Counted from the stretch's first letter, positions 48 through 59,900 are shown. The stretch: DNA of 64,000 nt from Macrostomum lignano (GCA_002269645.1 NIVC01000094.1:434001-498000); one strand, 5' to 3'. The notes: generated from the letters alone by a model not told the origin. A program made the numbers and translations.

Positions 48-335
48 ATCATTCCCTTAGCAACGGACATTCCCTTAGCAACGGACATTCCCTTAGCAAC
101 AGCCGTTCCCTTAGAAACAGCCATTCCCTTAGCAACAGCCATTCCCTTAGCAACAGCCATTCCCTTAGCAACAACCATTCCTTTAGCAACATCCGTTCCC
201 TTAGCAACAGCCGTTCCCTTAGCAACAGCCATTCCCTTAGCAACAACCATTCCTTTAGCAACATCCGTTCCCTTAGCAACAGCCATTCCCTTAGCAATAT
301 CCGTCCCTTAGCAACAGACATTCCCTTAGCAACAA
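48..335 (+). repeat. 18-bp minisatellite (cattcccttagcaacagc)n upstream of the FAPP2-like ATG
   Basis: About 16 direct copies; explains spurious ORFs 20..370, 23..286 and 49..321. Confidence 0.95.
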
Positions 336-369
336 AGCCAGCCAGCTTGAATTTGCCCTCAATGCGTTG

Positions 370-21651: not shown

Positions 21652-24600
21652 ATGCCTGACTACTATCTGCACCTTCGCCGACATCGCCGAGGCAGCCACC
21701 TGGTGCTGGACGCCTGGCGTCGGCAGCTGCGCGATCGATTCGAGCTGGAGGAGGCCGGCGGCGGCGGAATCCTGCTGCTGACCCTGCTTGATGAGGCAGA
21801 CGAAAGTTCTACCGCGCCTTTGACTGGCCACGAGCGGGCGGCCGCCTGCGCCCGTGCTCTGGCTCAGTGCCGCGCGGATGGGCCTCTGGCTGACGCTTTT
21901 GGCGGCAGCGGCGGCAGCGGAAGTGGCGGTACCTCCTGGCTGGATGCCGACCCTTCCTTGATGCGATTCTGCAAGCGAAAGGTGACCATTGCAATGGCTC
22001 CCTGATTGGCTCTCAGCTGCTAGGCCAGCCTCCCAGATCCTTAGTTGCTGGGCCACCGCCACCCTCCCAGATCCTCAGAACTGCTGGTCAACCCTCCCAG
22101 ATCCCCAGTTTCTGGGCCAGCTTCCCAGATACTCAGTTGCTGGGCCAGTCTCCCAGATACTCAGTTTCTGGGCCAGCCTCCCAGATCCTCAGTTGCTGGG
22201 CCAGCCTCCCAGATCCTCAGTTGCTGGGCCAGCCTCCCAGATCCTCAGTTGCTGGGCCAGCTTCCCAGATCCCCAGTTGCTGGGCCAGCCTCCCAGATCC
22301 CCAGTTGCTGGGCCAGCTTCCCAGATCCCCAGTTGCTGGGCCAGCCTCCCAGATCCTCAGTTGCTGGGCCAGCCTCCCAGATCCTTAGTTGCTGGGCCAC
22401 CGCCACCCTCCCAGATCCTCAGAACTGCTGGTAAACCCTCCCAGATCCCCAGTTGCTGGGCCAGCTTCCCAGATCCTCAGTTGCTGGGCCTGCCTCCCAG
22501 ATCCTCAGTTGCTGGGCCAGCTTCCCAGATCCTCAGTTGCTGGGCCTGCTTCCCAGATCCCCAGTTGCTGGGCCAGCTTCCCAGATCCTCAGTTGCTGGG
22601 CCAGCCTCCCAGATCTTCAGCTGCTGGGCCAGCCTCATAGATCCTCAGTTGCTGCGTCACCATCCCAACAAATTTCTTCACTGAAGCAGTTCTTGACTTT
22701 ATTTCTGATCACGCATTTCCCTGCCGCAGGGCTTTCTCCGCTCCCACGGTCCCCTGCACCGGCCGTCGGAGGCCCGCTCCCTGTGGCGCCGCCTGCTGAT
22801 GTCGGCGCGTCCACCAGTGGAGGAACTGCGCGCCTACTTCGGCGAGCCGGTGGCGCTGTACTTCGAGTGGATGCACTGCTACTCCTGCTGGCTGGGCCCG
22901 CCCGCCGTCTTCGGCCTGCTGCTCTGGCTGGCGTCGCTTCGGTCGGGCGTGTCGGTGGACAACAACCCCTACTTGTCGCTGTACGCTGTCGGCCTGTCAG
23001 TCTGGGGCTTCACATTTCTAAAATTGTGGCATCGGCGCGAAACGGAGCTGGCGCACGCCTGGGGCACCCTGGGACTCGTGCGGCTGGCGTCCAAGCTGAG
23101 GCCGGAGTTCTGGGGGCACAAGCGGATCAGCCCGGTCACCGGGGAGCTGGAGATTCATTATCCCAGGTGCGGCTTTGGGGTAATGATAAGCCGATCCAAG
23201 CACTGAGTGAGAGCGGAGAGGCAGATTCAAGCACTGAGGGAGAGTGGAGAGGCAGATTCAAGCACTGGGGAGAGCGGAGAGGCAGATTCAAGCACTGAAT
23301 GAGAGCGGAGAGGCAGATCCAAGCACTGAATGAGAGCGGTGAGGCAGATCCAAGCACTGAATGAGAGCGGAGAGGCAGATCCAAGCACTGGGGGAGAGCG
23401 GAGAGGCAGATCCAAGCACTGGGGGAGAGCGGAGAGGCAGATCCAAGCACTGAGGGAGAGCGGAGAGGCAGATCCAAGCACTGGGGGAGAGCGGAGAGGC
23501 AGATTCAAGCACTGAGGGAGAGCGGTGAGGCAGATCCAAGCACTGAATGAGAGCGGAGAGGCAGATTCAAGCACTGAATGAGAGCGGAGAGGCAGATTCA
23601 AGCACTGAATGAGAGCGGAGAGGCAGATCCAAGCACTGAGGGAGAGCGGAGAGGCAGATCCAAGCACTGAATGAGAGCGGAGAGGCAGATTCAAGCACTG
23701 AATGAGAGCGGAGAGGCAGATTCAAGCACTGAATGAGAGCGGAGAGGCAGATCCAAGCACTGGGGGAGAGCGGAGAGGCAGATCCAAGCACTGAATGAGA
23801 GCGGAGAGGCAGATTCAAGCACTGAATGAGAGCGGTGAGGCAGATTCAAGCACTGAATGAGAGCGGAGAGGCAGATTCAAGCACTGAATGAGAGCGGAGA
23901 GGCAGATTCAAGCACTGAATGAGAGCGGAGAGGCAGATTCAAGCACTGAATGAGAGCGGAGAGGCAGATCCAAGCACTGGGGGAGAGCGGAGAGGCAGAT
24001 CCAAGCACTGAATGAGAGCGGAGAGGCAGATTCAAGCACTGAATGAGAGCGGAGAGGCAGATTCAAGCACTGAGGGAGAGCGGAGAGGCAGATCCAAGCA
24101 CTGAATGAGAGCGGAGAGGCAGATCCAAGCACTGGGGGAGAGCGGAGAGGCAGATCAAAGCACTGAATGAGAGCGGTGAGGCAGATTCAAGCACTGAGGG
24201 AGAGCGCAGAGGCAGATTCAAGCACTGAGGGAGAGCGGTGAGGCAGATTCAAGCACTGAGGGAGAGCGGTGAGGCAGATTCAAGCACTGAGGGAGAGCGG
24301 AGAGGCAGATTCTAACACTGAAATAATTTGAATAGCATTTTATTCTACAAAAACAGATGGCGCCGCCGTCTGAAGCAGACCTGCTCGGGCATAGCAACCG
24401 TTGCTATGCTGCTAGTGGCACTGGCTTACACCGTGTGCAGCCTGAATCTGCAGGGCATGGTGGAGCCGGTGCACAGGTTCAACTACACCAACCCCTTCCA
24501 CATCGCCGTACTGGCGGCTCAGGCCGGCCCCGGCCGCGTCTTCGACCGCACCTGCGCCTGGCGAGCTACCCTGGCCGCCGTGCTGCACTCCGCCGGCGTC

Positions 24601-30223: not shown

Positions 30224-33200
30224 ATTCACTCGCAAGCACTTTCCTTCAGCTTCTCTCGCTTTGGCCTCATCTTCTGCTTTGCTGCATCGCAGCGGCTGTC
30301 GGCTTGGCCTCAGCCTCCTTAGCCAGCCTATCAGCCTCATCATCCTCAACTAGTGCGCCATCAATTCTGGTGGCTGTGCCGGCGCGCAACAAGGCGCACT
30401 CGCTGGGCCGCGCTCTGGCCTGCCTGCGGCGCCAGCGCTACCCGAAACGTCGCCTCGGCCTTCTGCTGATGACGGACCACAGCTCTGACGGCTCCGCCGC
30501 GGTGGCTGCCGACTGGTGCCGAGCCCTCCGACCCTGGTACGCCTTCGTGCAGCTGGTGGTGAGTCCGGAACTGTTCTCAATGATTCAGCAAGTAGAAAGC
30601 GAAACTCTTAGCAATTCATTTGTTTGCAATGGGAATAAAACCCAACTTAGACGCTGAGTAGAAAATAATTGAAGGACTGGTCCGAACAGATTGAATAGTG
30701 TGGTTGCAAAAGTCCAACGGCATAACAGAGGCATAATCCACCCCAGCATGTACGCAGGCCCTGCAGTACCCCCTGCCCAGCACCACCCACCCCAACATGA
30801 ACGCAGGCCCTGCAGTACCCCCTGCCCAGCACCACCCACCCCAACATGAACGCAGGCCCTGCAGTACCCCCTGCCCAGCACCACCCACCCCAACATGAAC
30901 GCAGGCCCTGCAGTACCCCCTGCCCAGCACCACCCACCCCAACATGAACGCAGGCCCTGCAGTACCCCCTGCCCAGCACCACCCACCCCAACATGAACGC
31001 AGGCCCTGCAGTACCCCTGCCCAGCACCACCCACCCCAACATGAACGCAGGCCCTGCAGTACCCCCTGCCCAGCACCACCCACCCCAACATGAACGCAGG
31101 CCCTGCAGTACCCCCTGCCCAGCACCACCCACCCCAACATGAACGCAGGCCCAGCAGTAACCCCCTGCTCAATGCCACCCACCCCAACATGAACGCAGGC
31201 CCTGCAGTACCCCCTGCCCAGCACCACCCACCCCAACATGAACGCAGGCCCTGCAGTACCCCCTGCCCAGCACCACCCACCCCAACATGAACGCAGGCCC
31301 TGCAGTACCCCCTGCCCAGCACCACCCACCCCAACATGAACGCAGGCCCAGCAGTAACCCCCTGCTCAATGCCATCCAATTAAAAGAAGAGCTCTCAATG
31401 GAGCCGCTGTTACGTCTGGCTAACTCGGCCTAAAGTAGCCCAAAGACGAGTCGCATTTGATCAGTTCGAGCATTATTTAAGTAGCTTTGGCTAGTCACAC
31501 AAATCGTAACTTAGTCAAGCTTCTAAGGCATTCTGGGGCCTAAGTTTCTAACCATACTGCTGGCAGTAGCGCTACAAGAGTTTGGCTGCTTTCCCCGCCC
31601 TCAGGAGGAGACGGAGCCCGCCTCCTACCCTGGCGAGACCGACCAGCTGCATTGGCCGGAGGCCCGCATGCGCCACCTGCTGCGCCTTCGTCAGCGAGCC
31701 CTGACTGCTGCCACCAGACTCGGCTTCGACTTCCTGCTTCTGCTAGATGCCGACGCGCTGCTGACCGAGCCGACAACCCTGTCCGCCCTGGTCGCTCTCG
31801 GCCGCCCAGCCGTCGCTCCGCTGCTGCTCACCGGCCGGCCGAATTCTCTGGCCGCGAATTTCTGGTCAGCCATCGGCCCGGACGGATATTACAGGCGCGG
31901 CCGGGACTACGCCAGGGTGCAGGCCCGCCAGCCCGGCTGGGTTGGACTGCAGCCGGCCGCCGTGCTGCACACCTGCGTGCTGCTGCGCACCCGGCTGGGC
32001 GTCGCACTGCACCCTCCGCCTGCCGACTATCCGGCCAGCTGGCCCATTGACGACCTGCCGCTGTTCTACTGGGTTGCCCGGCGGCTCCGGCCTCGCATTG
32101 ACAACCGACGAGTGTACGGCTTTTATCCGCCATCTCCGGAGTCGATTGACGGCCTGTCCGCAGCCCTGCTGGAGCGGGGCGCCTTCCGACGCCTGCTGAC
32201 CGACCTGCGGGATCAGCTGGCGACGCCTGTTCCGCATCCTCATCCGCATCCACATCCGCATCTGCATCCATATCCGCATCCGCATCCGCGTTCATATCCG
32301 CATCCGCATCCTCATCCGCATCCATATCCGCATCCGCATCCGCGTTCATATCCGCATCCGCATCCTCATCCGCATCCACATCCGCATCCGCATCCACATC
32401 CGCATCCGCATCCGCGTTCATATCCGCATCCGCATCCTCATCCGCATCCACATCCGCATCCGCATCCGCATTCATATCCGCATCCGCATCCGCATCGGGA
32501 TCCGCCGCCCGTGTTTATCATTGGCCTCGCGCGCCGTCCGGAGCGCCTTGCTCGCCTGTCTGCCGCCCTGTCGGACGCCGGCTGGCCGTATCAGCCGGTG
32601 CGCGCAGTCGACTGGCGCAGCCTTCGTCGCCGACGCCGCCGGAGACCGCTGCGGCAGCTGCCCGGCTACCGGGATCCCGCAACCGGCCGGCCGCTGACTC
32701 TGGGCGAAGCCGCCTGCCTGATGAGCCATCGGACTGTCTGGCGGCGAATTCGTCGGCTCCGGCTGGCCCGCGCCATCGTTCTGGAGGACGACGCCGACTT
32801 GTCGGCCGAATTCGAAGCGCTGGTGGAGGCGGCTCTCGCCGAAGCCGACGCCCTGCCCGCCTGGGACCTGCTGTACCTGGGCCGCAAGCCGCTGCTAGCG
32901 GGCGCGGAGACCCGAGTGCCGGGCAGCCGCTGGCTGGTGAGGCCGAACTACTCGCACTGGACGGTGGCCTACGTGCTCAGCCTGTCGGGCGCCAGGAAGC
33001 TGCTCAGCCTGCGCTCGCTGCCCAACCGTCTGCTACCTGTTGATGAGCTGCTGCCTGCCGCCTCAGGCGTCAGCCCGCACTTTTGGTCTAGCGATGCTGT
33101 CGGGTTGTCTGCCGACCGGCTGGCGGCCCTGTCCATCTGGCCGCTGCCGGTGGAGCCGCACAGGTACACCGGGATGCCGGGTCACCGGAGCGACACCGAG

Positions 33201-33287
33201 GATGCGCCTCCGCTTTGGTCACCGGAGCGGCTGGCCTTTGAGCGACTCGTTTTTGAGTCCAACTGGTGTCCGCGGCCTGAGTTCTGA
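30224..33287 (+). CDS. COLGALT1: Procollagen galactosyltransferase (COLGALT/GLT25D, GT25 family)-like; exons ~30224..30558 and 31605..33287; start codon not located
   Basis: Signal-like [23 protein letters not shown]; [14 protein letters not shown]...YPK; E.T.PASYP...HWPEAR..H...LRQ.AL; LLLDAD; NFW; [13 protein letters not shown]; GEAACLMSH; LEDD; WDLLYLGRK; [11 protein letters not shown]; C-terminal PEF. Donor GTGAGT at 30559, acceptor at 31604, phase 0. Confidence 0.88.
30740..31375 (+). repeat. 49-bp minisatellite in the COLGALT intron
   Basis: ccctgcagtaccccctgcccagcaccacccaccccaacatgaacgcagg, about 13 copies. Confidence 0.94.
32232..32496 (+). repeat. (CATCCG)n hexamer repeat, in frame within the COLGALT exon, encoding ~88 aa His-Pro
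   Basis: ORF 31668..33287 is uninterrupted; no strong GT/AG flanks the repeat. Confidence 0.9.
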
Positions 33288-33699
33288 GGGCTCCGGCTAC
33301 TTTTGTACTTTTGCATAAGTGCACATGTACTCCTCTTCAGCATTTGTCTGCTTTATTAACCAAGGTTTAGTTTTTTACATACAAGCTTTGCGGCTAAAGT
33401 AAATGTGATTTTTATCGGCAGCTGTTCAAAGTACCCACTGATGCACAGCACTAAAATTGCCTTTGAATTGCCTGTTTTAACTCTAAATTGCATTTCAGTA
33501 TTATTGTTTGACACCGTCTGACTGGTACCGTTAATATGAATGAATTCAATTCGAAATAAACGCGTACAGATGGCCAGTCCAAAGCACTGTAGCGTTATTT
33601 AATTACTTAATATAAATAATTCGTTTCTAAACATTTTTTTTACTTTTACTGCGCTTTTCTACTTTTTGAAGCTACCAAAACTCCTGGAGGTCTTTCGTT

Positions 33700-34175
33700 A
33701 CTTTGACCTCCCTTACCTCTCTGACCTCTTTTCTCTCTCTCTCTCTCTCTGACCTCCTTTCTCTGACCTCCCTTCTTCTCTGACCTCCCTTCTTCTCTGA
33801 CCTCTCTTCTCTCTGACCTCCCTCCCCTCATTGACCCTCCTCCCCTCTCTGACTTCCCTCCCCTCATTGACCCTCCTCCCTTCTCTGACCTCCCTCCTTT
33901 CATTGACCCTCCTCCCCTCTCTGACTTCCCTCCCCTCATTGACCCTCCTCCCTTCTCTGACCTCCCTCCCCTCATTGACCCTCCTCCCTTCTCTGACCTC
34001 TCTTCTTCTCTGACCTCCCTTCTTCTCTGACCTCCCTTCTTCTCTGACCTCTCTTCTCTCTGACCTCCCTCCCCTCATTGACCCTCCTCCCCTCTCTGAC
34101 CTCCCTCCCCTCATTGACCCTCCTCCCTTCTCTGACCTCCCTCCCCTCATTGACCCTCCTCCCCTTCTGACCTCC
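33700..34175 (+). repeat. CT-rich ~36-bp minisatellite
   Basis: ctctgacctccctcccctcattgaccctcctccc variants. Confidence 0.88.
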
Positions 34176-34639
34176 CTCGTTATTACAAGAGAGCAGACAA
34201 ATTTTGCCGTTCACTTAGAAGCAATAACATAAGCCGTTAAAGTGCATCAATCATGATAGTTAAGTGACGTCGCTACAGATCCAATTTTCATTTACAAATG
34301 GGAATTACGAGTATTATCTAGGGATTGGGAGGTTTATTGCCTCTCCTTGTAGACGTCAGATGTTACTCAAATGGGATCAGACTGCTCCAGTCCTGATTCA
34401 GAAATTAATAGCCTTCTCTGGCAATCTCTTAACTTTGTAGCTGTCTGTCTGTTTTGGTGTGTCGGGGTTTTCTGCCAGGATTTTTTACTTAGGAAGTAGA
34501 AGTGCCAAAGGGAATTGTACCCCAGCAGCTTAACCGAAAAAATAGCAATTTTCCTCAGTAGTAATACCGCCAATAAGAATTACCCCTGTTGGTAATTCTA
34601 CTGGATCTACTGGAGGTAATAAACAGTAGATCAGTTGAA

Positions 34640-35200
34640 TCACTGGGGAGAATTCCCCTAGCAGTATTACCACCAAAGAGAATTCCCCTAGCAGTATTAC
34701 CACCAAAGAGAATTCCTTCTAGCAGTATTATCTCCAAGGAGAATTCCCCTAGAGGTATTACCACCAAAGAGAATTCCTCTATCAGTATTACCACCAAGGA
34801 GAATTCCCCTAGCAGTATTACCTCTAAGGAGAATTCCCCTATCAGTATTACCACCAAAGAGAATTCCCCTAGCAGTATTACCTCCAAGGAGAATTCCCCT
34901 AGCAGTATTACCTCCAAGGAGAATTCCCCTATCAGTATTACCACCAAAGAGAATTCCCCTAGCAGTATTACCACCAAAGAGAATTCCCCTATCAGTATTA
35001 CCACCAAGGAGAATTCCCCTAGCAGTATTACCTCTAAGGAGAATTCCCCTAGAGGTATTACCACCAAAGAGAATTCCCCTAGCAGTATTACCTCCAAGGA
35101 GAATTCCCCTAGCAGTATTACCACCAAGGAGAATTCCCCTAGCAGTATTATAACCAAGGAGAATCCACCTAGCAGTATTACCGCTAAGGAGAATTCCCCC
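34640..35200 (+). repeat. 30-bp minisatellite (gagaattcccctagcagtattaccaccaaa)n
   Basis: About 18 copies; KENSPSSITT pseudo-ORF. Confidence 0.93.
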
Positions 35201-35774
35201 TAGCAATGGTAGTACCGATAAAAGTTTCTCTAATCTGTAGAACTACCACGTAGAATCCTCCGCTGTAATAGAACAGCCAAGGGGAATTCCCTAACAAGCA
35301 ATCCTAGAAGAACTGTAACCAAGCAAAAGTTATTCTAGCGAAGGAAATTACCTCCAGGTGTAATTCTCATGGTCTCAAACGCTGTTGACATGACTTCAGA
35401 TGAGTCATGTTTCACCCTCATCGCCAGCCTGACAATATTCACACTCACAATCTGAGCACAATAGTTGCCAGGCTTATTATTTTACTCAGCATTATGCTCT
35501 CATAAATCGCCAGCCCTAAAGAAAGAAGCAGAGCCGATCCCAGAGGGCCGGCTTCAGCCAGGCAGTAAAAGGCTGCACCTCATAGGTCCAAGTTTTGGCC
35601 GGGGCAGCAGCCCCCTCCCGACGCGTGCTGCATTTGCGCGGAATTTCAATGCACCAGCTGGCTTCGCTGAGCTTCTGCCGCGAGAGACGGTGCGAGTCAG
35701 TCAGGCTGCTAAAATTCATTACCGGAGAGTCCGGCTCAGGTCTCAGCAAGGAGCTCTAGTGATCGGTCGGCTGT

Positions 35775-36330
35775 ATACAGATCTAGCTGCGTCTACAGGT
35801 CTACTCAATCTACAGATCTAGCTGCGTCTACAGGTCTAGTCAATCTACAGATCTAGCTGCGTCTACAGGTCTACTCAATCTACAGATCTAGCTGCGTCTA
35901 CAGGTCTACTCAATCTACAGATCTAGCTGCGTCTACAGGTCTACTCAATCTACAGATCTAGCTGCGTCTACAGGTCTACTCAATCTACAGATCTAGCTGC
36001 ATCTACAGGTCTACTCAATCTACAGATCTAGCTGCGTCTACAGGTCTACTCAATCTACAGATCTAGCTGCGTCTACAGGTCTACTCAATCTACAGATCTA
36101 GCTGCGTCTACAGGTCTACTTAATCTACAGATCTAGCTGCGCCTACAGGTCTTTAATCTACAGATCTAGCTGCGTCTACAGGTCTACTTAATCTACAGAT
36201 CTAGCTGCGTCTACAGGTCTACTCAATCTACAGATCTAGCTGCGTCTACAGGTCTACTTATTAATCTACAGATGTAGCTGCGTCTACAGGTCTACCTAAT
36301 TTACAGTTCTAGCTGCGTCTACAGACGTAC
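35775..36330 (+). repeat. 35-bp minisatellite (tctacagatctagctgcgtctacaggtctactcaa)n
   Basis: About 16 copies upstream of the channel gene. Confidence 0.93.
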
Positions 36331-36473
36331 TCTTTCTGTAGATCTAATCTACCTAAGTAGATCTAGTTGCGATCTGCGATATCTATAGATCTATACAGTG
36401 ATTACCTATAGATCTGCTACATTTAGATACCAATCTACAGATCAAGAAGAGAATCTACGGACCTGCCAATCAG

Positions 36474-39400
36474 ATGCAGGTGCTGGACATCTGCTTCCAC
36501 AGCCAGCCACCCTTCTCCGACTGGCGCCAGCCGCAGCAGCGGGCTGCCAACCTCTCGATCAGCGGCGGCGACATCGGCGACCTCAGCGACGGCATCGAGG
36601 GTGTCTTCTGGGACCTGGCGCGGTCCGGTCTCGACCAGTGCGCCGCTGAATGGCGCGGCCCCGGCGCCTTCAGCTACCGGCTGAACCAGCTGAGCAGCGA
36701 GAGCAGGCTGCTGGCCGCCACTGCCGAAGGCGACTGCAACGTCGGGTTCCCGGCGACCTGGACTCCGCTGATGGACCGGCTGGCCGCGGTGCAGTTCCTG
36801 CCTATGGCCAGGTCGCCAGGTCTGGCCATTCTTGGACATTTTTGAAGGCCGATGTTTGCAATTTTACGTCTGAAAGGAAGCCACTGAGCATTAAGAACTC
36901 AAACACAGATCTTAACTTATTTAACTTATTAGATTAAATTAAGAGATGCTTATTACTGCCCTCAACAATGCCCTTATCAGTGCCCTTATCAGTGCCCTTA
37001 TCAGTGCCCTTATCAGTGCCCTTATCAGTGCCCTTATCAGTGCCTTTATCAGTGCCCTTATCAGTGCCCTTATCAGTGCCCTTATCAGTGCCCTTATCAG
37101 TGCCCTTATCAGTGCACCTAGTCGGTTATTAGAAATGTCCCATCTAATGGGCCCTGCATGGGCCAGCGACGCCCGTCTCCATCAGAACCTCCTCACTTCC
37201 AGGAGCGGTCTGGCTGGACACAACTGGCGGCCCGCATGCTGACGACGGCGCGTGGCAGCTGCGCACCGTGGCGCAGGCCTGGCCGCTGCTGCTTGTCATC
37301 CTGCTGTCTTGCGGCTACGCCGGCATCGCCATCTGGCTGCTGGAGCGGCTGCGCAACTCGCAAGAATTTCCCAGGCCGTTCGTGCGCGGCTTCTGGGAGG
37401 GCTGCTGGTGGGCCTTCATCACCATGACTACTGTTGGGTAAGTAATTTGGTTTGGAATTGGCTTTGCTTGGAAGTTTGGAACCACACACTCCACTCCAAT
37501 CACAATATACTAAATCTCTAATAGCTACTTAATTCTGATAGAACCCACCTCACTCCGCTAGCACCCACCTCACTCCGCTAGCACCCATCTCACTCCGCTG
37601 ATACTCACCTCACTCTGCTAGAACCCACCTCACTCCGCTGACACCCACCTTACTCCGCTAGCACCCACCTCACTCCGCTAGCACCAACCTCACTGCTCTA
37701 GCACCCACCTTACTCCGCTAGCACCCACCTCACTCCGCTAGCACCCACCTCACTCCGCTAGCACCCACCTCACTCCGCTAGCATCCACCTCACTCCGCTA
37801 GCACCCACCTCACTCCGCTAGCACCCACCTCACTTCGCAACATGTCCATTCAACCCCCGTCGCCCAGCTACGGTGATCGGTCGCCCAGCTACGGTGATCG
37901 GTCGCCCAAGTCAGTGTGCGGCCGTCTGTTCGCCTTCGCTTGGATCAGCTTCGGCCTGGTTGCCGTGTCAATGTTCACCGCTGGCATCACTGCGGCGCTC
38001 AGCGCTCAGGGCATGCAGCAGTTTGATGACGCCAAACTTATCGATGCGGGGGTGAGGCTGGTTTTGGCAGTTGCAGCGCATTTTCGCGTGGCAATAATAC
38101 CTGTGCTACTCATTCATTCTCATTGGTACCCTGCTCGCACTGCAGATGATTGTGCTGGACGGATCGCACGAGGAGAGCTTGGTTTACGAGTTCGGTTCTG
38201 CCCCTGTTGGTGAGGCGGCTTGAGTCTGGTGATGAAGCTTGGTTGTTCCCTCTCCCTTGACGCCTCTCCCTTCACGCCTCTCCCTTCACGCCTCTCCCTT
38301 CAGGCCTCTCCCTTCACGCCTCCCCCTTCATGTCTCTCCCTTCATGATCCCTTCATGCTTCTCGGATCATCGCAGTCGTGCCCACCTGGACCGATCTGGT
38401 TTCTGCTGCCGCGTCGTCGCCTCCTAAGAGCCGCCTGTCCTCGCCGTCCAACGACACTCAGGGGATCTCGCAACCTCCGCACGGCGTCCTGATGGAGCAT
38501 TTCATGTACCTTCACGTCCGCCAGCAGCACCCGCACCGCTTGCGGGCCTCCGCAGCCGCCGGCGTCTCCCAGCCGATGCTCGTTAGGCGGCCCACTCTGC
38601 GGGGCTTCCTCATCCGCGGCCTGCCCGACAAACTGTCCGAGAGTCTTGCCAGCCGCCTCCTCGGACAGCAGCTCAGCGTCTACGGACGGCTGGCCGGGCT
38701 GGCGCACGCGGACGAGGAGATCGGGGTGACTCGAGAGGATTCGGGTGGGATTCGGGTGGGATTCGGGCGGGATTCGGGTGGGATTCGGGTGGGATTCGGG
38801 TGGGATTCGGGTGGGATTCGGGCGGGATTCGGGTGGGATTCGGGTGGGATTCGGGTGGGATTCGGGTGGGATTCATGTGGGATTCGGGTGGGATTCGGGT
38901 GGGATTCAGGTGGGATTTCCATTGGATTCGGGCGGGATTCGGGTGGGACTTCCAGTGGATTCGAGTGGGACTCGGGTGAGATTCGAGTGGGATTCCATGG
39001 GATTAGGATGGGAGTCGTGGGAGTTCATATAGATTCGTCTGAGATTTTATCAGGAAGAGGTCGGCGATGGCTCCTGAGGTGTTACATGCGAGTGCAGCTG
39101 CACATGATGAAGGCTCTGGCTTCGACTTGAAGGAGAATCCTCAGGGATTTCTCATGATTTAAAAATGTTGTTCATCCTTCGAGATCACTCAGCATTGATG
39201 CAACATCGCGAGTTCCCGAGATCCCGGATCCTCTCCGCTGCCGCATGCCGATGGGAAAACAGAATGCATGCGAACTTCGCTCGCTAAATCCAATCTCTGG
39301 GATGCAAAATTTTCATTTGCGGCCAGCTCTAAGTGGGACCATGCAGGGCTGATCTGGCTTCTGTCGCGGCTGTCCATCCGCACTTATTTATCTGCTGATC

Positions 39401-40344
39401 AGCTGAAGCTCGCTACCCCCCCCCCACTCAGACTGCAGGCCTTTCATCAGTTGTCTAAATCTTCTCGAATTCCTTTTCTTTTCATTCGAGTCTGTGCACT
39501 ACAGACTGCCAGCAAACTTCAGTTATCAGAATAAGTTATTTCCTTTCTTTTCCTAGGTTTTTCCCAAAGAATCCTGATAATTATAAAAAAGTTTGCACAA
39601 AGCCTCATGCTATGACTAAGGCATAAGAATTTGAGTTGCTTGCTTCACTTTTGAACGGACGGGCAGTGAGGCGAGTGTCTGAGGGAGTGGGGATCTGAGC
39701 ACACTGGCAGTGAGGCGGGTGTCTGTGGGAGTGGGGATCTGAGCACACGGGCAGTGAGGCAGGTGTCTGAGGGAATGGGGATCTGAGCACGCTGGCAGTG
39801 AGGCAGGTGTCTGAGGGAGTGGGAATCTGAGCACACTGGCAGTGAGGCAGGTGTCTGAGGGAGTGGGGATCTGAGCACACTGGCAGTGAGGCGGATGTCT
39901 GTCCCGCATTTCAGCCACCCGAAGATCCACAGAGCCCGGAGGTGGTGGCCCGCTCCCTCTTCGTTGCCAACCGGCTGCAGCTGCTGGCGCTGGCGGTCTG
40001 CCTGGCGCTGCTGCTGGCGCTCCTGTTCGCCTGGGAGAAGCTGCGCTGGGCACCAAGGAATCCGCACTACCAGTGTAAGACTGCCGATTCCCACTTGGCC
40101 TCACTGCAGTTTTTCTCGCTACAAGTCATCTTCCCAAATTTCAGACGTGGAGCGCAACTGGAAATACGAGCGTCAGCGCAAAGACGCGGAGCTGCAGCAC
40201 CTGCGGATGCAGGCGCTGGCTTCGCCGAATTCGAGAAGTCGGCGGCTTCAGAGGCTTCGACTAAACCGGGACCAGAAGTCGCAGCCGCCGCAGCCGCCGG
40301 TCCAAATGGAGGCTGCAGATGAAGCTGGTGATGTCTGTGCATGA
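36474..40344 (+). CDS. iGluR-architecture ligand-gated channel with K+ channel filter (GluR0/AvGluR1-like), ~505 aa: join(36474..36819,37203..37437,37889..38051 [alt 37868],38146..38209,38376..38725,39915..40074,40145..40344)
   Basis: Spliced translation: S1 ...VGFPATWTPLMDRLAAVQFLPMARSPG; M1 AWPLLLVILLSCGYAGIAIWLLE; pore FWEGCWWAFITMTTVG|YGDRSPKS; M2 LFAFAWISFGLVAVSMFTAGITAALS; S2 MIVLDGSHEE...GVLMEHFMY; last TM LQLLALAVCLALLLALLFAW. All six junctions are GT-AG and phase-compatible, total 1518 nt. The 5' end may be incomplete. Confidence 0.85.
36960..37116 (+). repeat. 12-bp repeat (agtgcccttatc)n in channel intron 1
   Basis: About 13 copies. Confidence 0.93.
37545..37835 (+). repeat. 20-bp repeat (gcacccacctcactccgcta)n in channel intron 2
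   Basis: About 14 copies. Confidence 0.92.
38738..39000 (+). repeat. 11-bp repeat (gggattcgggt)n in channel intron 5
   Basis: Starts 12 nt after the donor at 38726. Confidence 0.92.
39660..39898 (+). repeat. 44-bp repeat in channel intron 5, ending just before the acceptor at 39914
   Basis: ggcagtgaggcaggtgtctgagggagtggggatctgagcacact, about 5.5 copies. Confidence 0.9.
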
Positions 40345-40529
40345 ATGCAGCTCGAATCGATTCACCAAGATTCAAATTGCTTTTTTAGTAAAAGCAGAGA
40401 AAGCGGTCAGCTTTTTCTTGTTACATGTGCATGTGGCTCGCTCTTACCCAATGGTCATTTCCGATTGATTTGACCTCTCATTAAGAAAAAACACTGCCAT
40501 CTTATTCTGTCCTTCTATATCTCTGAGCC

Positions 40530-41245
40530 GTCAACCCCACTCCCTAGCCCTGCTAACCCTTCACTCTGAGGCACCAACACCACTCGCTACCCCCGCTACC
40601 CCTCATTTTGAAGCACCAACCCCACTCCCTGCCCCCGCTACGCCTCATTATCTGAGGCACCAACCCCACTCCCTGCCCCCGCTACGCCTCATTATCTGAG
40701 GCACCAACCCCACTCCCTGCCCCCGCTACTCCTCATTCTCTGAGGCGGCACCAACCCCACTTTCTGCCCCGCTACCCCTCATTATCTGAGGCACCAACCC
40801 CAATTCCTGCCCCGCTACCCCTCATTATCTGAGGCACCAACCCCACTTTCTGCCCCGCTACCCCTCACTCTCTGAGGCACCAACTCCACTCCCTGCCCCG
40901 CTACCCCTCACTCCCTGAGGCACCAACCCCACTCCCTGCCCCGCTACCCCTCACTCTCTGAGGCACCAACTCCACTTCCTGCCCCGCTACCCCTCACTCT
41001 CTGAGGCACCAACTCCACTCTCTGCCCCGCTACCCCTCACTCTCTGAGGCACCAACTCCACTCCCTGCCCCGCTACCCCTCACTCTCTGAGGCACCAACC
41101 CCACTCCCTGCCCCGCTACCCCTCACTCTCTGAGGCACCAACCCCACTTTCTTCCCCGCTACCCCTCATTATCTGAGGCACCAACCCCACTCCCTGCCCG
41201 CTACCCCTCACTCTCTGAGACACCAACCTCACTCCCTGCCCCTAC
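40530..41245 (+). repeat. ~43-bp C-rich minisatellite
   Basis: ctgaggcaccaaccccactccctgccccgctacccctcactct variants. Confidence 0.9.
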
Positions 41246-43565: not shown

Positions 43566-56410
<12,845 letters not shown>

Positions 56411-56971: not shown

Positions 56972-59900
56972 ATGGCCGCTGATGTAAGTACCGCGATAGA
57001 CTTTTTTTTCTTTTGTAAAAAAGGACAAGTTTAACAAACAAGTGAACCCACGTCGGGCAAAACACTTGCAATTGCTCTTTCTTAAGATTCTGAAGTTCGA
57101 TATTTGACGGCCAACCATTTGGGTTATGGTTGCAGTTAGAGTTTAGGTTAGGGTTTTAGGTCAGGGTTTAGGTTTGTGTTTAGCTTAGGGTTTAGTATAG
57201 GATTTAGTATAGGGTTTAGTTTAGAGTTTAGTTTAGGGTTTAATTTAGGGTTAGTTTAGGGTTTAGTTTAGGGTTTAGTTTAGGGTTTAGTTTAGAGTTT
57301 AGTATAGGGTTTAGTTTAGGGTTTAGTTTAGGGTTCAGTTTAGGGGTTAGTTTAGGGTTTACGAGTTAGTTTAAGGTTTTTGCTCAGTTTGCGATCTTTC
57401 TTTTCCAAAATCAGCTGTCCCGTGAGTTTCAGCTGGCAATTAAATGTTTTTAATGGATAGTTACGAGCTAAAAACTTGCAGGCAAAATTTTTTTTTAATT
57501 TTCAACGGGGACGCTTGAGACTCTAAAATCTTGTCTATTTAGCGCCCCAGAAATTCTGCTTGAGCAATGCAAACAGAAGCAAATTAATAATTTATGCAAT
57601 AAAAAGACTAAAAGCTTAGAATCCCATCAGGAATTCCTCCCTCATCGCTTCCAGCCTCTCAAACCGGAGGATGACTGCGACATGGCGACCACACTGGAGG
57701 AGCCTTTTAGTGCGTGAGACCGTTCTGAAACAGTTTCTGCCGAAAAAAGATGAATTATGATTTCTGATCCTGCTGCGGCCTGCTGGTGCAGCGGGATTGA
57801 AAAATATTTTATGATTATCAGGAGATGAAAATGAGTTAAAAGAATTAAGATGAGGGAATTAAGACAAAGCTGGCCTAGTGCCAACTGTAGCTCGGGTCCC
57901 ATCAACACAAATACCGACACCTTCCAAATCCAGGTACCCAAACAACCATTCAGATACCCAAGCACTAATACAGGCACCCAAACACCCATCCAGGTACACA
58001 AACACCCATCCAGGTACCCAAACAACCATTCAGATACCCAAGCACTAATACAGGCACCCAAACACCCATCCAGGTACCCAAACACGCATCCAGGCACCCA
58101 AAAACCCATCCAGGCACCCAAACACCCACCCAGGTACCGAAAAATACCCACTCAGGTGCCCAAACACCTATCCAGGTAACCAAAACATCCATCTAGGTAC
58201 CCAAACACCCATCCAGGTACCCAAACACCCATCCAGGTACCAAAAAACTCACCCGCAGTGTCCAAAGGCGAGCTCGCCCTGCACGAGGCGGCCCGCACAG
58301 GCAAGGAGGCCCGTCTGGAGGAGCTGCTGACGATCGTGAAGGTGGACTGTCGCAACAACCTGAACCGCACAGCGCTGCACATGGCGGCCAGCAAGGGCCA
58401 GACGGGGGCTGTCCGAGTCCTGCTCGAATACAAGGCCGGCATCGAGCTGGCCGACAAGTACGGCATGACCGCCTTGATGTGGGCGACCTACTTCGGCCAC
58501 ATCGAAGTTGTAGAACTGCTGCTGGAACGGTCGGCCAGCGTCAAGAAACGAAACAAGCTCGGCATGCACGCGCTGCACATCGCGGCCGACCAGAACAACT
58601 GCGAGCTGGTGCGGCTGTACCTCACCAAGACTAAGAAGAGCATCCTGAATGACACCGAGAAGGTGACAGTGGAGTTGCTTTAAATATCGACTGTAATGTT
58701 TAGACATTGATTTCAATATTATCGCTCCTTTCTGTAGAACGGCCAGACGGCTCTGATGATTGCGGCTGGAAAAGGCAACATTGAGGTTGTGCAACTGCTG
58801 CTGAGCTATCCGGAGGTTGATCTGATGGTCAAGGACGCTGTGAGTTTCTGCATCGTTGCAGGCTCTCCAATCAGGAAGACACTTGTAACGCTAGTCGTAA
58901 CGCATTGACAAAGGGGTGGGAGTGAGTATGGACTGGGAGTAGGGAGGGGCAGGGAGTGAGGAGGGGCAGGGAGTGAGGAGGGGCAGGGAGTGAGGAGGCG
59001 CAGGGAGTGAGGAGGGGCAGGGAGTGAGGAGGGGCAGGGAGTGAGGAGGGGCAGGGAGTGAGGAGGGGCAGGGAGTGAGGAGGGGCAGGGAGTGAGGAGG
59101 GGCAGGGAGTGAGGAGGGGCAGGGAGTGAGGAGGGGCAGGGAGTGAGGAGGGGCAGGGAGTGAGGAGGGGCTGGGAGTGAGGAGGGGCAGGGAGTGAGGA
59201 GGGGCAGGGAGTGAGGAGGGGCTGGGAGTGAGGAGGGGCAGGGAGTGAGGAGGGGCAGGGAGTGAGGAGGGGCAGGGAGTGAGGAGGGGCAGGGAGTGAG
59301 GAGGGGCAGGGAGTGAGGAGGGGCAGGGAGTGAGGAGGGGCAGGGAGTGAGGAGGGGCAGGGAGTGAGGAGGGGCAGGGAGTGAGGAGGGGCAGGGAGTG
59401 AGGAGGGGCAGGGAGTGAGGAGGGGCAGGGAGTGAGGAGGGGTAGGGAGTGAGGTGGGTATGAAATAATAACTACCCAATAAATAACAATCGCTCCAGAA
59501 AAAGATGACGGCACTGCATCTGGCAGCGGAGAACGGATGCGCCAAGGTGCTAGAAGAGCTGCTCCGGGAGGTGTACAAGCTGCGGGACCTGGTGAACGAG
59601 AAGGACGAAAGTGAGCGAATCCCGCTGCACTACGCGGTTGAAAAGGGCCACATCGGGGCGATCCGCTGCCTGCTGACCCACGGCAGCGAGGTGAACGCCA
59701 CCGCTGAGGTAGGGAAGCCTTTCATAGCCCAATCTGAGTTATTTTATTGATACAACTCCACCTTCAGAGTGAATAAATTTCAGCGCGAAATGACGGCTTT
59801 CCACCTGGCCGCTGTCAAGGGTCACATGGACGTGCTCAAATACCTCAAAGAGCACGGCGCCAACGTGAACGCTCTGAACCTTGTGAGTTCTAACTCGCTT

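What the first reader, a model, noticed from the sequence alone, without database searches (positions are those of the whole stretch)
36474..40344. Animal gene for a glutamate-receptor-type channel with an intact K+ selectivity filter (GluR0/AvGluR1-like), hidden by introns
Seen: seven phase-compatible GT-AG exons translate to S1-M1-pore-M2-S2-TM-tail. The pore WWAFITMTTVG|YGD is split by an intron and is absent from the ORF track. Ligand-domain residues fall at iGluR spacing: MDRLAAVQF vs GluA2 LVREEVIDF (the alpha-carboxyl Arg), VLDGSHEE vs TLDSGSTKE, VLMEHFMY vs LLESTMNE (the amino-group Glu), and FTAGITAAL at the SYTANLAAF gate position. Established: TxVGYG is the K+ channel signature; cyanobacterial GluR0 is a K+-selective glutamate-gated channel with this layout; rotifer AvGluR1 is the best-known animal iGluR retaining the motif; classical AMPA/kainate/NMDA/delta receptors lack it. 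Inference: an amino-acid-gated, possibly K+-selective (inhibitory) receptor with no amino-terminal domain but a eukaryote-like extra TM. His in place of Thr after the S2 Ser suggests the ligand may not be glutamate. Its introns show it is a resident animal gene, not contamination. Uncharacterised homologues may already exist in other invertebrates. No signal peptide was found, so the 5' end is probably incomplete.
Basis: partly seen in the sequence, partly recalled or inferred. Interest (0 to 1): 0.92.

Follow-up and report, generated by a model that had tools for sequence, protein, structure and literature searches.

The report
Animal glutamate-receptor-type potassium channel gene
This seven-exon flatworm-type gene encodes a channel built like a glutamate receptor but with a potassium-channel pore, and it belongs to a large family found in cnidarians, annelids, hemichordates and flatworms that I could not find described in any paper.

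Summary
Seven GT-AG exons on the + strand (36474-40344) join into one 505-aa reading frame. The order is S1, M1, pore helix with TMTTVG|YGD, M3, S2, M4 and a basic tail. An intron splits the filter Gly codon.

The pore scores as a K+ channel pore (Ion_trans_2, 55 bits) and passes Pfam's Lig_chan cut-off.

The gene is not an orphan. An exhaustive profile search finds at least 287 clusters with the same architecture. Named members come from cnidarians, annelids, hemichordates and Macrostomum. Every name is generic or wrong.

A high-confidence AlphaFold model of the Glandiceps member matches only iGluR LBD-TMD structures in the PDB. With the pore removed, the family's ligand domain still aligns with bacterial GluR0-type binding domains (97%). 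The window's own domain aligns with the family's (96%).

Three introns sit at the same position and phase as in the hemichordate gene, and two more nearly so. The flanking genes are animal genes. This is therefore a resident, vertically inherited animal gene.

Three things remain open. The S1 arginine is not conserved, so the ligand is unknown. No signal-peptide exon was found. K+ selectivity and ligand gating are inferred. I found no paper on this family.

The parts
36474..36819 (+). Exon 1 (346 nt). It runs from the ATG to most of S1, lobe 1 of the ligand-binding domain. It includes PPFSD (strand 1) and TPLMDRLAAVQFLPMA (36762-36809), which holds the candidate alpha-carboxylate Arg.
   Evidence: ORF and splice sites. 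tblastn of M. lignano P0013/P0001 covers 36594-36818. An AG lies directly before the ATG, so this may be an internal or trans-spliced exon. No signal peptide lies upstream in frame.
37203..37437 (+). Exon 2 (235 nt). It holds the end of S1 (GAVWLD), pre-M1, M1 (37277-37342), the pore helix and the first half of the filter, ...WWAFITMTTVG (filter starts at 37427). An alternative acceptor lies at 37167.
   Evidence: tblastn hits from all homologues end at 37438. Ion_trans_2 and Lig_chan cover this exon and the next.
37438..37888 (+). Intron 2, phase 2, inside the filter Gly codon (GG|C). It contains a 20-bp minisatellite (37539-37838). A 21-bp tandem duplication (37859-37908) duplicates the acceptor.
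   Evidence: The Glandiceps orthologue has an intron at the same codon position and phase (GG|A).
37889..38051 (+). Exon 3 (163 nt). It holds YGD of the filter, M3 with the gate-region motif SMFTAGITAAL (M3 at 37920-38000), and the start of S2.
   Evidence: All homologues begin aligning at 37890, which favours this acceptor over 37868.
38146..38209 (+). Exon 4 (64 nt). S2 segment MIVLDGSHEESLVYEFGSAPV, the position of GluA2 G653-S654-T655.
   Evidence: The Glandiceps gene has a 64-nt exon with the same two boundaries and phases.
38376..38725 (+). Exon 5 (350 nt). The rest of S2. It contains a lineage-specific Ser/Pro-rich loop (38414-38479) and HGVLMEHFMY (38480-38509), which carries the conserved acidic residue at the GluA2-E705 position.
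39915..40074 (+). Exon 6 (160 nt). Pre-M4 linker, M4 (39975-40034) and the start of the basic cytoplasmic tail.
   Evidence: 59% identity to M. lignano P0013 residues 574-643. A hydrophobic segment lies about 200 aa after the filter, as in nearly all family members.
40145..40344 (+). Exon 7 (200 nt). Arg/Lys-rich C-terminal tail (YVERNWKYERQRK...) and the TGA stop.
   Evidence: The positive charge after M4 fits a cytoplasmic C-terminus and therefore an extracellular S1/S2.

Best explanation
The locus is a resident animal gene, in a Macrostomum-type flatworm genome, for one subunit of a tetrameric channel with glutamate-receptor architecture. The architecture lacks an amino-terminal domain.

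Shown:
- The protein has a two-part extracellular clamshell (S1 and S2) interleaved with an M1 / pore-loop / M3 module, followed by a fourth membrane helix (M4) and a basic cytoplasmic tail.
- The pore helix and filter (WWAFITMTTVGYGD) are those of a canonical K+ channel.
- The gene is one member of a large cnidarian-plus-bilaterian family with this same layout.
- The family's clamshell is homologous to the amino-acid-binding domains of bacterial GluR0-type channels.
- The whole LBD-TMD unit of a family member models like AMPA/NMDA receptor LBD-TMD structures.

Inferred:
- As in GluR0 and iGluRs, the pore is inverted in the membrane.
- A small extracellular ligand closes the clamshell.
- The S1-M1, M3-S2 and S2-M4 linkers pull the M3 bundle (S-x-F-T-A-x-L-T) open, and K+ flows out.
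- The receptor would therefore hyperpolarise the cell, acting as an inhibitory ionotropic receptor.

The ligand is unknown and is probably not bound the classical way. The alpha-carboxylate Arg is not conserved in the family, while the acidic residue that binds the ligand's amino group is.
For: **Gene model.** Seven GT-AG exons give one ORF with GC3 of 0.81. All exons are recovered by tblastn with M. lignano A0A1I8J4Y3.

**Pore.** Ion_trans_2 scores 55 bits, Lig_chan scores 35.9 bits (cut-off 30.8), and the best PDB sequence matches are K+ channel pores.

**Family.** 287 clusters have E<=1e-30. Of 161 fetched sequences, 134 carry TTVGYGD. The 40 full-length members I inspected have M1, the pore, M3 and a C-terminal TM about 200 aa later. 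Named members are cnidarian, annelid, hemichordate or Macrostomum.

**Fold.** The AF2 model of Glandiceps LOC144435396, built with a 111-sequence alignment, has mean pLDDT 83.6, with most 10-residue blocks of the ligand domain above 90. Its top 50 Foldseek hits in the PDB are all iGluR LBD-TMD or full-length chains. The best is 8c1r_A, E 4.9e-13, with about 430-480 aligned columns.

**LBD homology without the pore.**
- Family versus bacterial SBP_bac_3-type GluR0-like LBDs: hhalign 97.3%, E 2e-11.
- Window plus M. lignano LBD versus the rest of the family: 95.8%, E 8e-9, 218 columns covering S1 and S2.
- LBD-only HMM versus the PDB hits only bacterial polar amino-acid binding proteins.

**Vertical descent.** The intron phases after the pore are 2, 0, 1, 0, 1 in both the window and Glandiceps. 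Three introns share the exact column, both genes have a 64-nt exon, and the neighbouring genes are animal genes.

**Topology.** Family members carry signal peptides (P0004, P0005, Saccoglossus, Ptychodera, Owenia). The Glandiceps ORF continues upstream into a signal-like segment. The tail after M4 is strongly basic.
Against: - No function has been measured for any member. K+ selectivity and ligand gating are inferred from motifs and architecture.
- The window protein itself was not folded. On their own, its S1 and S2 find only Macrostomum relatives by BLASTP, and they do not align significantly with bacterial LBDs directly.
- Pfam detects no binding-protein domain in any animal member tested.
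- The canonical S1 Arg is not conserved.
- The family's Cys motif (CCGxC) is reduced to a single Cys in the Macrostomum lineage.
- No signal-peptide exon was found, and none of six spliced models exists in a 15-billion-protein collection. Expression and the true 5' end are therefore unproven.
- Foldseek TM-scores are modest (0.30-0.49) because the relative placement of the domains differs.
Confidence: 0.65

Rival explanations
1. The protein is a K+ channel whose clamshell no longer binds a small-molecule agonist. It would be a leak channel, or a channel gated by something else such as ions, pH, a protein partner or membrane stretch, and the LBD-like domain would be structural or regulatory.
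For: The alpha-carboxylate Arg is not conserved across the family and is absent from the nearest M. lignano relative. Pfam no longer recognises the domain. Some cnidarian members add CUB and Ig domains, which usually bind proteins.
Against: The clamshell is conserved over the cnidarian-bilaterian divergence. Pocket-position residues are conserved: D/E at the E705 position in 89 of 108 members, D/E two residues after the S654 position in 91 of 108, and Arg or Ser/Thr at the S654 position in 91 of 108. The M3 gate motif and the three LBD-TMD linkers are retained. That is the machinery needed for clamshell-driven gating.
Confidence: 0.2
2. This copy is a decaying or unexpressed paralogue, that is, a pseudogene in the making. 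The family may be functional elsewhere.
For: No signal peptide or upstream exon was found. The spliced protein is absent from public protein sets. The LBD is very diverged, with Ser/Pro-rich loop insertions and loss of the CCGxC motif. A 21-bp duplication created a second acceptor at the filter exon.
Against: The 1518-nt frame is intact across seven exons and all splice sites are intact. GC3 is 0.81, well above the intron GC. The filter, pore helix, M3 and M4 are 59-72% identical to the M. lignano protein. The duplication is in frame and leaves the downstream acceptor usable.
Confidence: 0.1
3. Despite the TTVGYGD signature, the channel is a weakly selective or non-selective cation channel, and therefore excitatory, as most eukaryotic iGluRs are.
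For: Selectivity depends on more than the signature. A filter set in an inverted, iGluR-type scaffold has been tested in only a few proteins.
Against: The full pore helix plus filter plus Asp (WWAFITMTTVGYGD) matches canonical K+ channels such as Lmo2059, KcsA and KvAP. It is nearly invariant in the family. GluR0, with the same signature, is described as K+-selective, and AvGluR1 as selective for K+ over Na+ (PMC12332018; PMC12226733).
Confidence: 0.05
4. The gene is bacterial contamination, a recent horizontal transfer of a GluR0-type gene, or an ordinary two-TM K+ channel with unrelated flanks.
For: By sequence the family is nearer to bacterial SBP_bac_3+Lig_chan+Ion_trans_2 proteins than to classical iGluRs.
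Against: The gene has six spliceosomal introns. Three are at the identical position and phase as in a hemichordate gene, and two more nearly so. Animal genes lie on both sides in the same window. An M4 helix is present that the bacterial proteins recovered here lack. LBD homology holds with the pore removed.
Confidence: 0.01

Closest known systems
GluR0 (Synechocystis Slr1257) and bacterial GluR0-type channels (SBP_bac_3 + Lig_chan + Ion_trans_2)
   Same: The S1 / M1 / P-loop / M2 / S2 order, the TTVGYGD K+ filter and the absence of an amino-terminal domain are shared. After the animal family, these are the closest proteins by profile (E about 1e-49 to 1e-45). The ligand domains are homologous with the pore removed (97.3%).
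   Different: The window protein and its family have an extra C-terminal transmembrane helix (M4) and a cytoplasmic tail. They are intron-containing animal genes. Pfam's SBP_bac_3 and Lig_chan-Glu_bd models no longer detect their ligand domain. The ligand-binding Arg that is conserved in four of the five aligned bacterial proteins is not conserved in the animal family.
[quoted passage not shown] 2011; Lomash et al. 2013)
   Same: Both are animal iGluR-type subunits with M4 that keep the K+ channel signature sequence. Reviews treat AvGluR1 as the evolutionary intermediate between bacterial and vertebrate receptors (PMC12332018; PMC12226733).
   Different: AvGluR1 is described as having the same architecture as eukaryotic iGluRs (PMC12332018), which by my knowledge of the family includes an amino-terminal domain. 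The window protein has none. The LBD-only profile of the family finds no AvGluR1 LBD entry in the PDB at E<=10. AvGluR1 is known from a single lineage, whereas this family spans cnidarians and bilaterians.
Classical metazoan iGluRs (AMPA, kainate, delta, NMDA, epsilon, lambda)
   Same: The LBD-TMD architecture including M4 is shared. The best structural matches of a family member are GluA1-4 and GluN1/2 LBD-TMD chains. Pfam Lig_chan is passed.
   Different: The family has no ATD. It has a K+ channel filter instead of the Q/R/N-site pore loop. The SYTANLAAF motif is only loosely kept, as SMFTAGITAAL. Sequence identity to the structural matches is about 15%. The family would fall below the inclusion criteria of two large iGluR surveys (PMC6307864; PMC12226733); that reading is my inference.
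Canonical two-TM and six-TM K+ channels (KcsA, Lmo2059, KvAP, KCNQ)
   Same: The pore helix, the TTVGYGD filter and the inner helix are shared. These are the only significant sequence matches in the PDB.
   Different: In the window protein the pore is flanked by the two halves of a binding-protein fold and followed by M4. It has no voltage sensor, RCK or cyclic-nucleotide domain. The predicted membrane orientation is inverted.

Membership tests
iGluR superfamily (LBD-TMD ligand-gated channels) | Ligand-binding domain split into S1 and S2 around an M1 / P-loop / M3 channel module | tested here: met
   Alignments with family members and with bacterial GluR0-type proteins show S1 before M1 and S2 after M3.
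iGluR superfamily (LBD-TMD ligand-gated channels) | S1 and S2 form a bilobed type-II periplasmic-binding-protein fold (family level) | tested here: met
   The AF2 model of the Glandiceps member has mean pLDDT 83.6, and its top 50 Foldseek PDB hits are all iGluR LBD-TMD or full-length chains. LBD-only hhalign against bacterial SBP-type LBDs gives 97.3%.
iGluR superfamily (LBD-TMD ligand-gated channels) | The same fold in the window protein itself | tested here: inconclusive
   The evidence is indirect only. Window plus M. lignano LBD versus the rest of the family gives hhalign 95.8%, E 8e-9, over 218 columns. S1 and S2 alone give no significant direct match to bacterial LBDs.
iGluR superfamily (LBD-TMD ligand-gated channels) | Pfam Lig_chan (PF00060) above the gathering score | tested here: met
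   35.9 bits against a cut-off of 30.8, E 8.2e-9, residues 146-238. All four animal members scanned match.
iGluR superfamily (LBD-TMD ligand-gated channels) | SYTANLAAF gate motif in M3 (at least 4 of 9 residues, the criterion of Ramos-Vicente et al. 2018) | tested here: not met
   The window has SMFTAGITAAL, which gives 3 identities ungapped and 4 with a one-residue gap. The family consensus is S-x-F-T-A-x-L-T. The criterion is quoted from PMC6307864.
iGluR superfamily (LBD-TMD ligand-gated channels) | M4 helix after S2 (eukaryotic iGluRs) | tested here: met
   A hydrophobic helix lies at residues 407-426, followed by a basic tail. It is present in the 40 full-length members inspected and is 59% identical to the M. 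lignano protein.
iGluR superfamily (LBD-TMD ligand-gated channels) | Amino-terminal domain (classical eukaryotic classes) | tested here: not met
   S1 starts at residue 2. Family members have only a signal peptide, with or without a short Cys-rich stretch, before S1. One cnidarian subgroup has CUB and Ig domains instead.
iGluR superfamily (LBD-TMD ligand-gated channels) | Agonist-contact residues: Arg in S1, Ser/Thr in S2, acidic residue in S2 | tested here: inconclusive
   The window has R102, S255 and E in HGVLMEHF in plausible register. In the family the Arg columns hold R in only 11-17 of 108 members, and M. lignano has Gly/Leu there. The acidic residue is D/E in 89 of 108.
GluR0-type K+-selective bacterial receptors | TxVGYG selectivity-filter signature | tested here: met
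   TMTTVGYGD is present. Ion_trans_2 scores 55 bits.
GluR0-type K+-selective bacterial receptors | Only two transmembrane helices, with no M4 | tested here: not met
   M4 is present. The bacterial proteins end shortly after S2.
GluR0-type K+-selective bacterial receptors | Ligand domain recognisable as SBP_bac_3 / Lig_chan-Glu_bd | tested here: not met
   Pfam gives no hit at E<=10 in the four animal members scanned. Homology is seen only by profile-profile comparison and by weak HMM hits to bacterial amino-acid binding proteins.
GluR0-type K+-selective bacterial receptors | Glutamate-gated, K+-selective current | not testable with these tools
   This needs electrophysiology.
AvGluR1-like animal iGluR with K+ signature | Full eukaryotic iGluR architecture (taken to include the ATD) together with the K+ signature | tested here: not met
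   The signature and M4 are present but there is no ATD. PMC12332018 describes AvGluR1 as having the same architecture as eukaryotic iGluRs; that this includes an ATD is my own knowledge. No AvGluR1 LBD entry is matched by the LBD profile.

The most novel reading that the evidence does not exclude
The window gene is a member of an ancient, unrecognised class of animal ionotropic receptors. These would be ATD-less, M4-bearing, iGluR-architecture channels that kept the ancestral K+ filter. The class predates the cnidarian-bilaterian split and survives in cnidarians, annelids, hemichordates and flatworms. No member was recovered from vertebrates or ecdysozoans.

These receptors would act as ligand-gated K+ (inhibitory) channels for a ligand that is not bound like glutamate. 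If so, the class is a better candidate than the single rotifer AvGluR1 for the link between bacterial GluR0 and animal glutamate receptors. It would also be a natural fast inhibitory K+ receptor class.
Probability: 0.45. Interest if true: 0.9.

Novelty: new variant of a known kind. Interest (0 to 1): 0.74.

Why it matters
Textbook and recent review accounts link K+ channels to glutamate receptors through bacterial GluR0 and one rotifer protein, AvGluR1 (PMC12332018, PMC12226733). An earlier survey stated that the combination of binding domain and K+ filter was found only in bacteria (PMC2950845).

This gene belongs to a family of hundreds of animal proteins with that combination plus the eukaryotic M4 helix. 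The intron structure is shared between a flatworm-type genome and a hemichordate.

If the family works as its architecture predicts, many marine invertebrates have a fast, ligand-gated K+ conductance of the glutamate-receptor type. That would bear on three questions:
- how the iGluR pore lost K+ selectivity;
- when M4 was added, here apparently before or independently of the ATD;
- how inhibitory signalling is built in cnidarian and other non-vertebrate nervous systems.

Compact ATD-less subunits of about 450-500 aa would also be attractive for structural work and as chemogenetic silencers.

For genome annotation, current names for family members ('Cubilin', 'Kv subfamily F member 1', 'SGF29 C-terminal domain-containing protein') are wrong or chimeric.

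Tried and rejected
1. My first junction choice for exon 1/2 (36811/37203) broke the frame. A scan of donors and acceptors gave three in-frame pairs. I kept 36819/37203.

By the same stated rule it could not be given to structure prediction. I therefore used homologues as proxies.

3. The first AF2 run on Glandiceps P0002, with a 10-sequence alignment, was poor (pLDDT 51) and I did not use it. The second run, with 111 sequences, was good.

4. I first misread tblastn hits as tandem intronless paralogues upstream of the Glandiceps gene. They belong to other loci stored in the same file, and I withdrew the claim.

5. The word-indexed protein search found only five animal relatives, which suggested a rare gene. 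The exhaustive HMM search overturned that.

6. PDB sequence searches with the whole protein or whole-family profile return only K+ channel pores. The LBD had to be tested with the pore cut out.

7. Family S1, S2 and M4 HMMs dominated by the large unnamed clade score the window's segments only marginally. S1 reaches 9.8 bits, best of 200 shuffles. S2 reaches 2.9 bits. M4 is no better than shuffles.

8. The search for a signal-peptide exon in 33290-36473 gave nothing convincing. The best candidate is 34371-34466 (MGSDCSS...FVAVCLFWCVG), which has a weak donor.

9. Exact look-ups found nothing on record, both for a neighbouring ORF and for six spliced models. The species could not be named.

10. 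Eight literature searches found no paper describing the family.

Full report
**1. The observation**

The region 36474-40344 lies in a repeat-rich eukaryotic sequence. GC-rich blocks are separated by minisatellite-filled spacers. I rebuilt the gene model from the sequence.

My first junction choice broke the frame. A scan of GT donors and AG acceptors gave in-frame solutions. The preferred model is:
- exon 1: 36474-36819
- exon 2: 37203-37437
- exon 3: 37889-38051
- exon 4: 38146-38209
- exon 5: 38376-38725
- exon 6: 39915-40074
- exon 7: 40145-40344

All introns are GT-AG. Together the exons make one 1518-nt frame of 505 codons plus TGA.

GC at third codon positions is 0.81. Exon GC is 0.55-0.69 against 0.44-0.58 in the introns.

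All the quoted peptide motifs are there.

Two details were open.
- The exon 1/2 junction has alternatives (36811/37186 and 36819/37167). I prefer 36819/37203. Its acceptor has a good pyrimidine tract, and it yields ...FLPMARSP|GAVWLD, which matches the family motif F-[IL]-P-x-x-x-x-P-G-[AS]-V.
- A 21-bp tandem duplication (37859-37908) creates a second in-frame acceptor at 37868, which would add YGDRSPS. Every homologue starts aligning at 37890, so 37889 is the likely acceptor.

**2. What the protein is**

Pfam finds Ion_trans_2 (55 bits, E 7.6e-15), Lig_chan (35.9 bits against a gathering score of 30.8) and Ion_trans on residues 144-238. It finds nothing on the flanks. By sequence, the PDB returns only K+ channel pores: Lmo2059, KCNQ, KvAP and KcsA.

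The first protein search gave two Macrostomum lignano proteins (40% and 51% identity), an uncharacterised Glandiceps talaboti (hemichordate) protein and two unnamed transcript-like contigs. Below these came bacterial proteins with SBP_bac_3 + Lig_chan + Ion_trans_2, the GluR0 type.

A multiple alignment shows the layout:
- S1, with the PPF strand and a ...F-x-P... motif;
- M1, the pore helix and filter, and M3;
- S2, with G-[ST]-x-x-E and [DE] motifs;
- in the animal proteins only, a further hydrophobic helix and a basic tail.

**3. The family is large**

The word-indexed search suggested a rare gene. An exhaustive HMM search against 1.84 billion cluster representatives changed that picture. 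It found 287 clusters at E<=1e-30, with most listed matches near full length on proteins of about 440-500 aa.

Of 161 sequences fetched, 134 carry TTVGYGD. The 40 full-length members I inspected have M1, the pore, M3 and a C-terminal TM about 200 residues after the filter.

Names from two look-ups place members in these groups:
- hemichordates: Saccoglossus LOC102804213, Ptychodera, Glandiceps;
- annelids: Owenia, Dimorphilus;
- many cnidarians: Nematostella, Hydra, Hydractinia, Clytia, Rhopilema, Acropora, Porites, Stylophora, Exaiptasia, Actinia, Dendronephthya, Xenia;
- Macrostomum.

All are called 'uncharacterized', 'potassium channel domain-containing', or are misnamed ('Cubilin', 'Kv subfamily F member 1', 'SGF29 C-terminal domain-containing'). 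Bacterial GluR0-type proteins follow at E about 1e-49. No classical iGluR appears among the 120 listed proteins (the lowest at E 2e-45; 135 passed the 1e-30 cut-off).

**4. Is the flanking domain really an iGluR-type clamshell?**

The tools refuse spliced sequences, so I used the Glandiceps orthologue as a proxy.

- With ten sequences AlphaFold gave a poor model (pLDDT 51).
- With 111 family sequences it gave mean pLDDT 83.6, with most 10-residue blocks of the ligand domain above 90.
- Foldseek against the PDB returns only iGluR chains in the top 50. These are GluA1-4 and GluN1/2, as LBD-TMD or full-length chains. The best is 8c1r_A, E 4.9e-13, probability 1.0, with about 430-480 aligned columns and about 15% identity.
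- TM-scores are modest (0.30-0.49) because the domains are placed differently relative to each other.

To exclude a pore-driven match I cut the pore out.
- The family's S1+S2 profile aligns with the S1+S2 of bacterial GluR0-type proteins at 97.3% probability, E 2e-11, over 189 columns.
- The same LBD-only profile hits only bacterial polar amino-acid binding proteins in the PDB: 4ohn at E 6.6e-4, then 3hv1 and 3kzg. The GluR0 LBD scores E 1.5. No eukaryotic iGluR LBD or AvGluR1 LBD is hit.

The window's own ligand domain is very diverged.
- Alone, it finds only Macrostomum relatives by BLASTP.
- It scores weakly against family HMMs.
- A two-sequence profile (window plus M. lignano A0A1I8J4Y3) aligns with the rest of the family at 95.8%, E 8e-9, over 218 columns spanning both lobes.

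The fold assignment for the window protein is therefore transitive rather than direct.

**5. Resident animal gene**

The same window encodes a PH-GLTP protein, Fat/CELSR-type cadherins, an anoctamin, a GT25 glycosyltransferase, a protein kinase on the minus strand and an ankyrin-repeat protein.

The C-terminal 'extension' of the M. lignano models matches the window at 47482-47667 and 52922-53059. That is antisense to the kinase exons. Those models are therefore chimeric, and the two genomes share the order channel gene, then kinase.

I solved the Glandiceps exon structure exactly.

| Genome | Exon lengths (nt) |
|---|---|
| Glandiceps | 438 / 95 / 160 / 64 / 266 / 154 / 446 |
| Window | 346 / 235 / 163 / 64 / 350 / 160 / 200 |

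From the filter onward the intron phases are 2, 0, 1, 0, 1 in both. Three introns fall at the same alignment column: inside the filter Gly codon, and on both sides of the 64-nt exon. Two more fall within 1-4 columns in poorly aligned stretches. This argues for descent from a common bilaterian gene. It excludes contamination or a recent transfer.

**6. Ligand-binding residues**

hhalign's only local match between the window LBD and the bacterial LBDs pairs MDR with the bacterial ...DRE.... But the Arg is not a family feature.
- The two candidate columns hold Arg in 11 and 17 of 108 animal members. The closest M. lignano protein has Gly/Leu there.
- The acidic residue at the GluA2-E705 position is conserved (D 81, E 8 of 108).
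- The residue at the S654 position is Arg in 50, Ser in 22 and Thr in 19.
- Two positions later there is an acidic residue in 91 of 108.

The pocket therefore looks conserved but non-canonical, and the ligand is unknown. 'Amino-acid-gated' is not established.

**7. The 5' end**

Family members with complete N-termini have signal peptides directly before the first S1 strand (P0004, P0005, Saccoglossus, Ptychodera, Owenia). The Glandiceps reading frame continues upstream of its annotated ATG into a signal-like segment.

In the window, a stop lies 25 codons before the ATG. An AG sits directly before the ATG. I found no convincing upstream exon in 33290-36473. The best candidate is 34371-34466, with a weak donor.

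The basic tail after M4 fits an extracellular ligand domain, so a signal sequence is expected. It could come from a missed exon. Alternatively the mRNA may be trans-spliced at that AG; from memory, spliced-leader trans-splicing occurs in Macrostomum, and I did not test this.

None of six spliced variants is present in the 15-billion-protein collection.

**8. Mechanism**

The steps that are shown are the architecture, the filter, homology to iGluR and GluR0 at family level, and conservation since the cnidarian-bilaterian ancestor.

The rest is inferred:
- tetramer formation and an inverted pore;
- clamshell closure on an extracellular small molecule;
- opening of the M3 bundle;
- K+ efflux, and so hyperpolarisation.

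The rivals are a ligand-insensitive K+ channel (0.2), a decaying copy (0.1), a non-selective pore (0.05), and contamination or an ordinary K+ channel (0.01).

**9. Comparison with what is known**

The nearest described systems are bacterial GluR0, the rotifer AvGluR1 and the classical iGluRs.
- GluR0 has the same order and filter and no ATD, but lacks M4 and its LBD is recognised by Pfam.
- AvGluR1 has the K+ signature and M4, and is described as having the eukaryotic iGluR architecture. That architecture includes an ATD, which the window protein lacks.
- Classical iGluRs have the same LBD-TMD-M4 fold, but they carry an ATD, have no K+ filter and have SYTANLAAF.

Recent reviews still present AvGluR1 as the intermediate form (PMC12332018; PMC12226733). 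A 2010 survey stated that the binding-domain-plus-K+-filter combination was found only in bacteria (PMC2950845).

Eight searches of the held library, including a search for gene identifiers, found no paper on this family.

Two large iGluR surveys used filters that I infer would exclude the family. One required at least 4 SYTANLAAF residues (PMC6307864). The other used an IPR001320 HMM at E<=1e-10 (PMC12226733); that entry corresponds, as I recall, to Pfam Lig_chan, whose hit here is 8e-9. The library does not hold most subscription-journal papers, so a prior description cannot be excluded.

**10. Verdict**

The gene is one diverged member of a widespread, unnamed animal family that is already present but unrecognised in public databases. 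It is not a unique gene. I rate it a new variant of a known kind, with interest 0.74. Function, ligand, the 5' end and expression remain to be shown.

Noticed in passing
L002-L005 (Logan runs SRR33215971, SRR33215973 and SRR33215984; ENA assembly ERZ26222911): More than 100 of the 50%-identity cluster representatives form a separate clade of intronless paralogues of about 450-480 aa. They have a signal peptide and a Cys-rich stretch before S1. They sit on AT-rich contigs (34-35% GC, measured for L002-L004) from unnamed samples, one of them next to a reverse-transcriptase element. The organism, apparently one with a huge expansion of this family, is unidentified.
   Followed up: partly
Related proteins P0187-P0201, P0092, P0120 (cnidarians): A cnidarian subgroup of about 680-800 aa carries N-terminal CUB and immunoglobulin domains in front of the LBD-pore-M4 core, in the position where classical iGluRs have their amino-terminal domain. 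One is annotated 'Cubilin' and another 'Kv subfamily F member 1'.
   Followed up: no
window 47482-47667 and 52922-53059 (+), against kinase exons 47407-47817 and 52892-53383 (-): The M. lignano UniProt models A0A1I8J4Y3 (P0013) and P0001 are chimeras. They join an SGF29 fragment, the channel (with in-frame stretches at the positions of window introns 1 and 3, likely retained introns) and an antisense read of the downstream protein kinase. The match shows conserved gene order between the window and M. lignano.
   Followed up: partly
window 37859-37908: A perfect 21-bp tandem duplication (2.4 copies) spans the acceptor of the exon that starts with YGD of the filter. It creates two in-frame acceptors 21 nt apart. 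Use of the upstream one would insert YGDRSPS right after the filter.
   Followed up: partly
window 35776-41242: The four longer introns and both flanks of the gene each carry their own unrelated minisatellite: 35-bp x16 upstream; 12-bp x14 in intron 1; 20-bp x15 in intron 2; 14-bp x7 in intron 4; 11-bp x26 and 44-bp x5.5 in intron 5; 43-bp x17 downstream. The two short introns (94 and 70 nt) have none. The whole window is similarly rich in such arrays.
   Followed up: no
window 31527-33284 (+): The upstream neighbour is a GT25 glycosyltransferase-like ORF. It is interrupted by a long His-Pro dipeptide repeat (HPHPHP..., coded by an 18/24-bp tandem array at 32231-32505) inside the reading frame.
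   Followed up: no
window 295-1911, 11195-16503, 22709-23203, 58180-58680 (+): Other genes in the window are a PH + GLTP protein (FAPP2-like), a Fat/CELSR-type protocadherin with at least 8 cadherin repeats in one long exon, an anoctamin exon and an ankyrin-repeat exon. They show that the window is from an animal genome.
   Followed up: partly
L001 5902-6000 (Glandiceps talaboti OZ203269.1): The annotated start of LOC144435396 lies 33 codons downstream of an in-frame ATG. That ATG opens a signal-peptide-like segment (MAVRMIWIDLVISTLAIYNFLCFEPTSA...). The NCBI model probably lacks its true N-terminus.
   Followed up: partly
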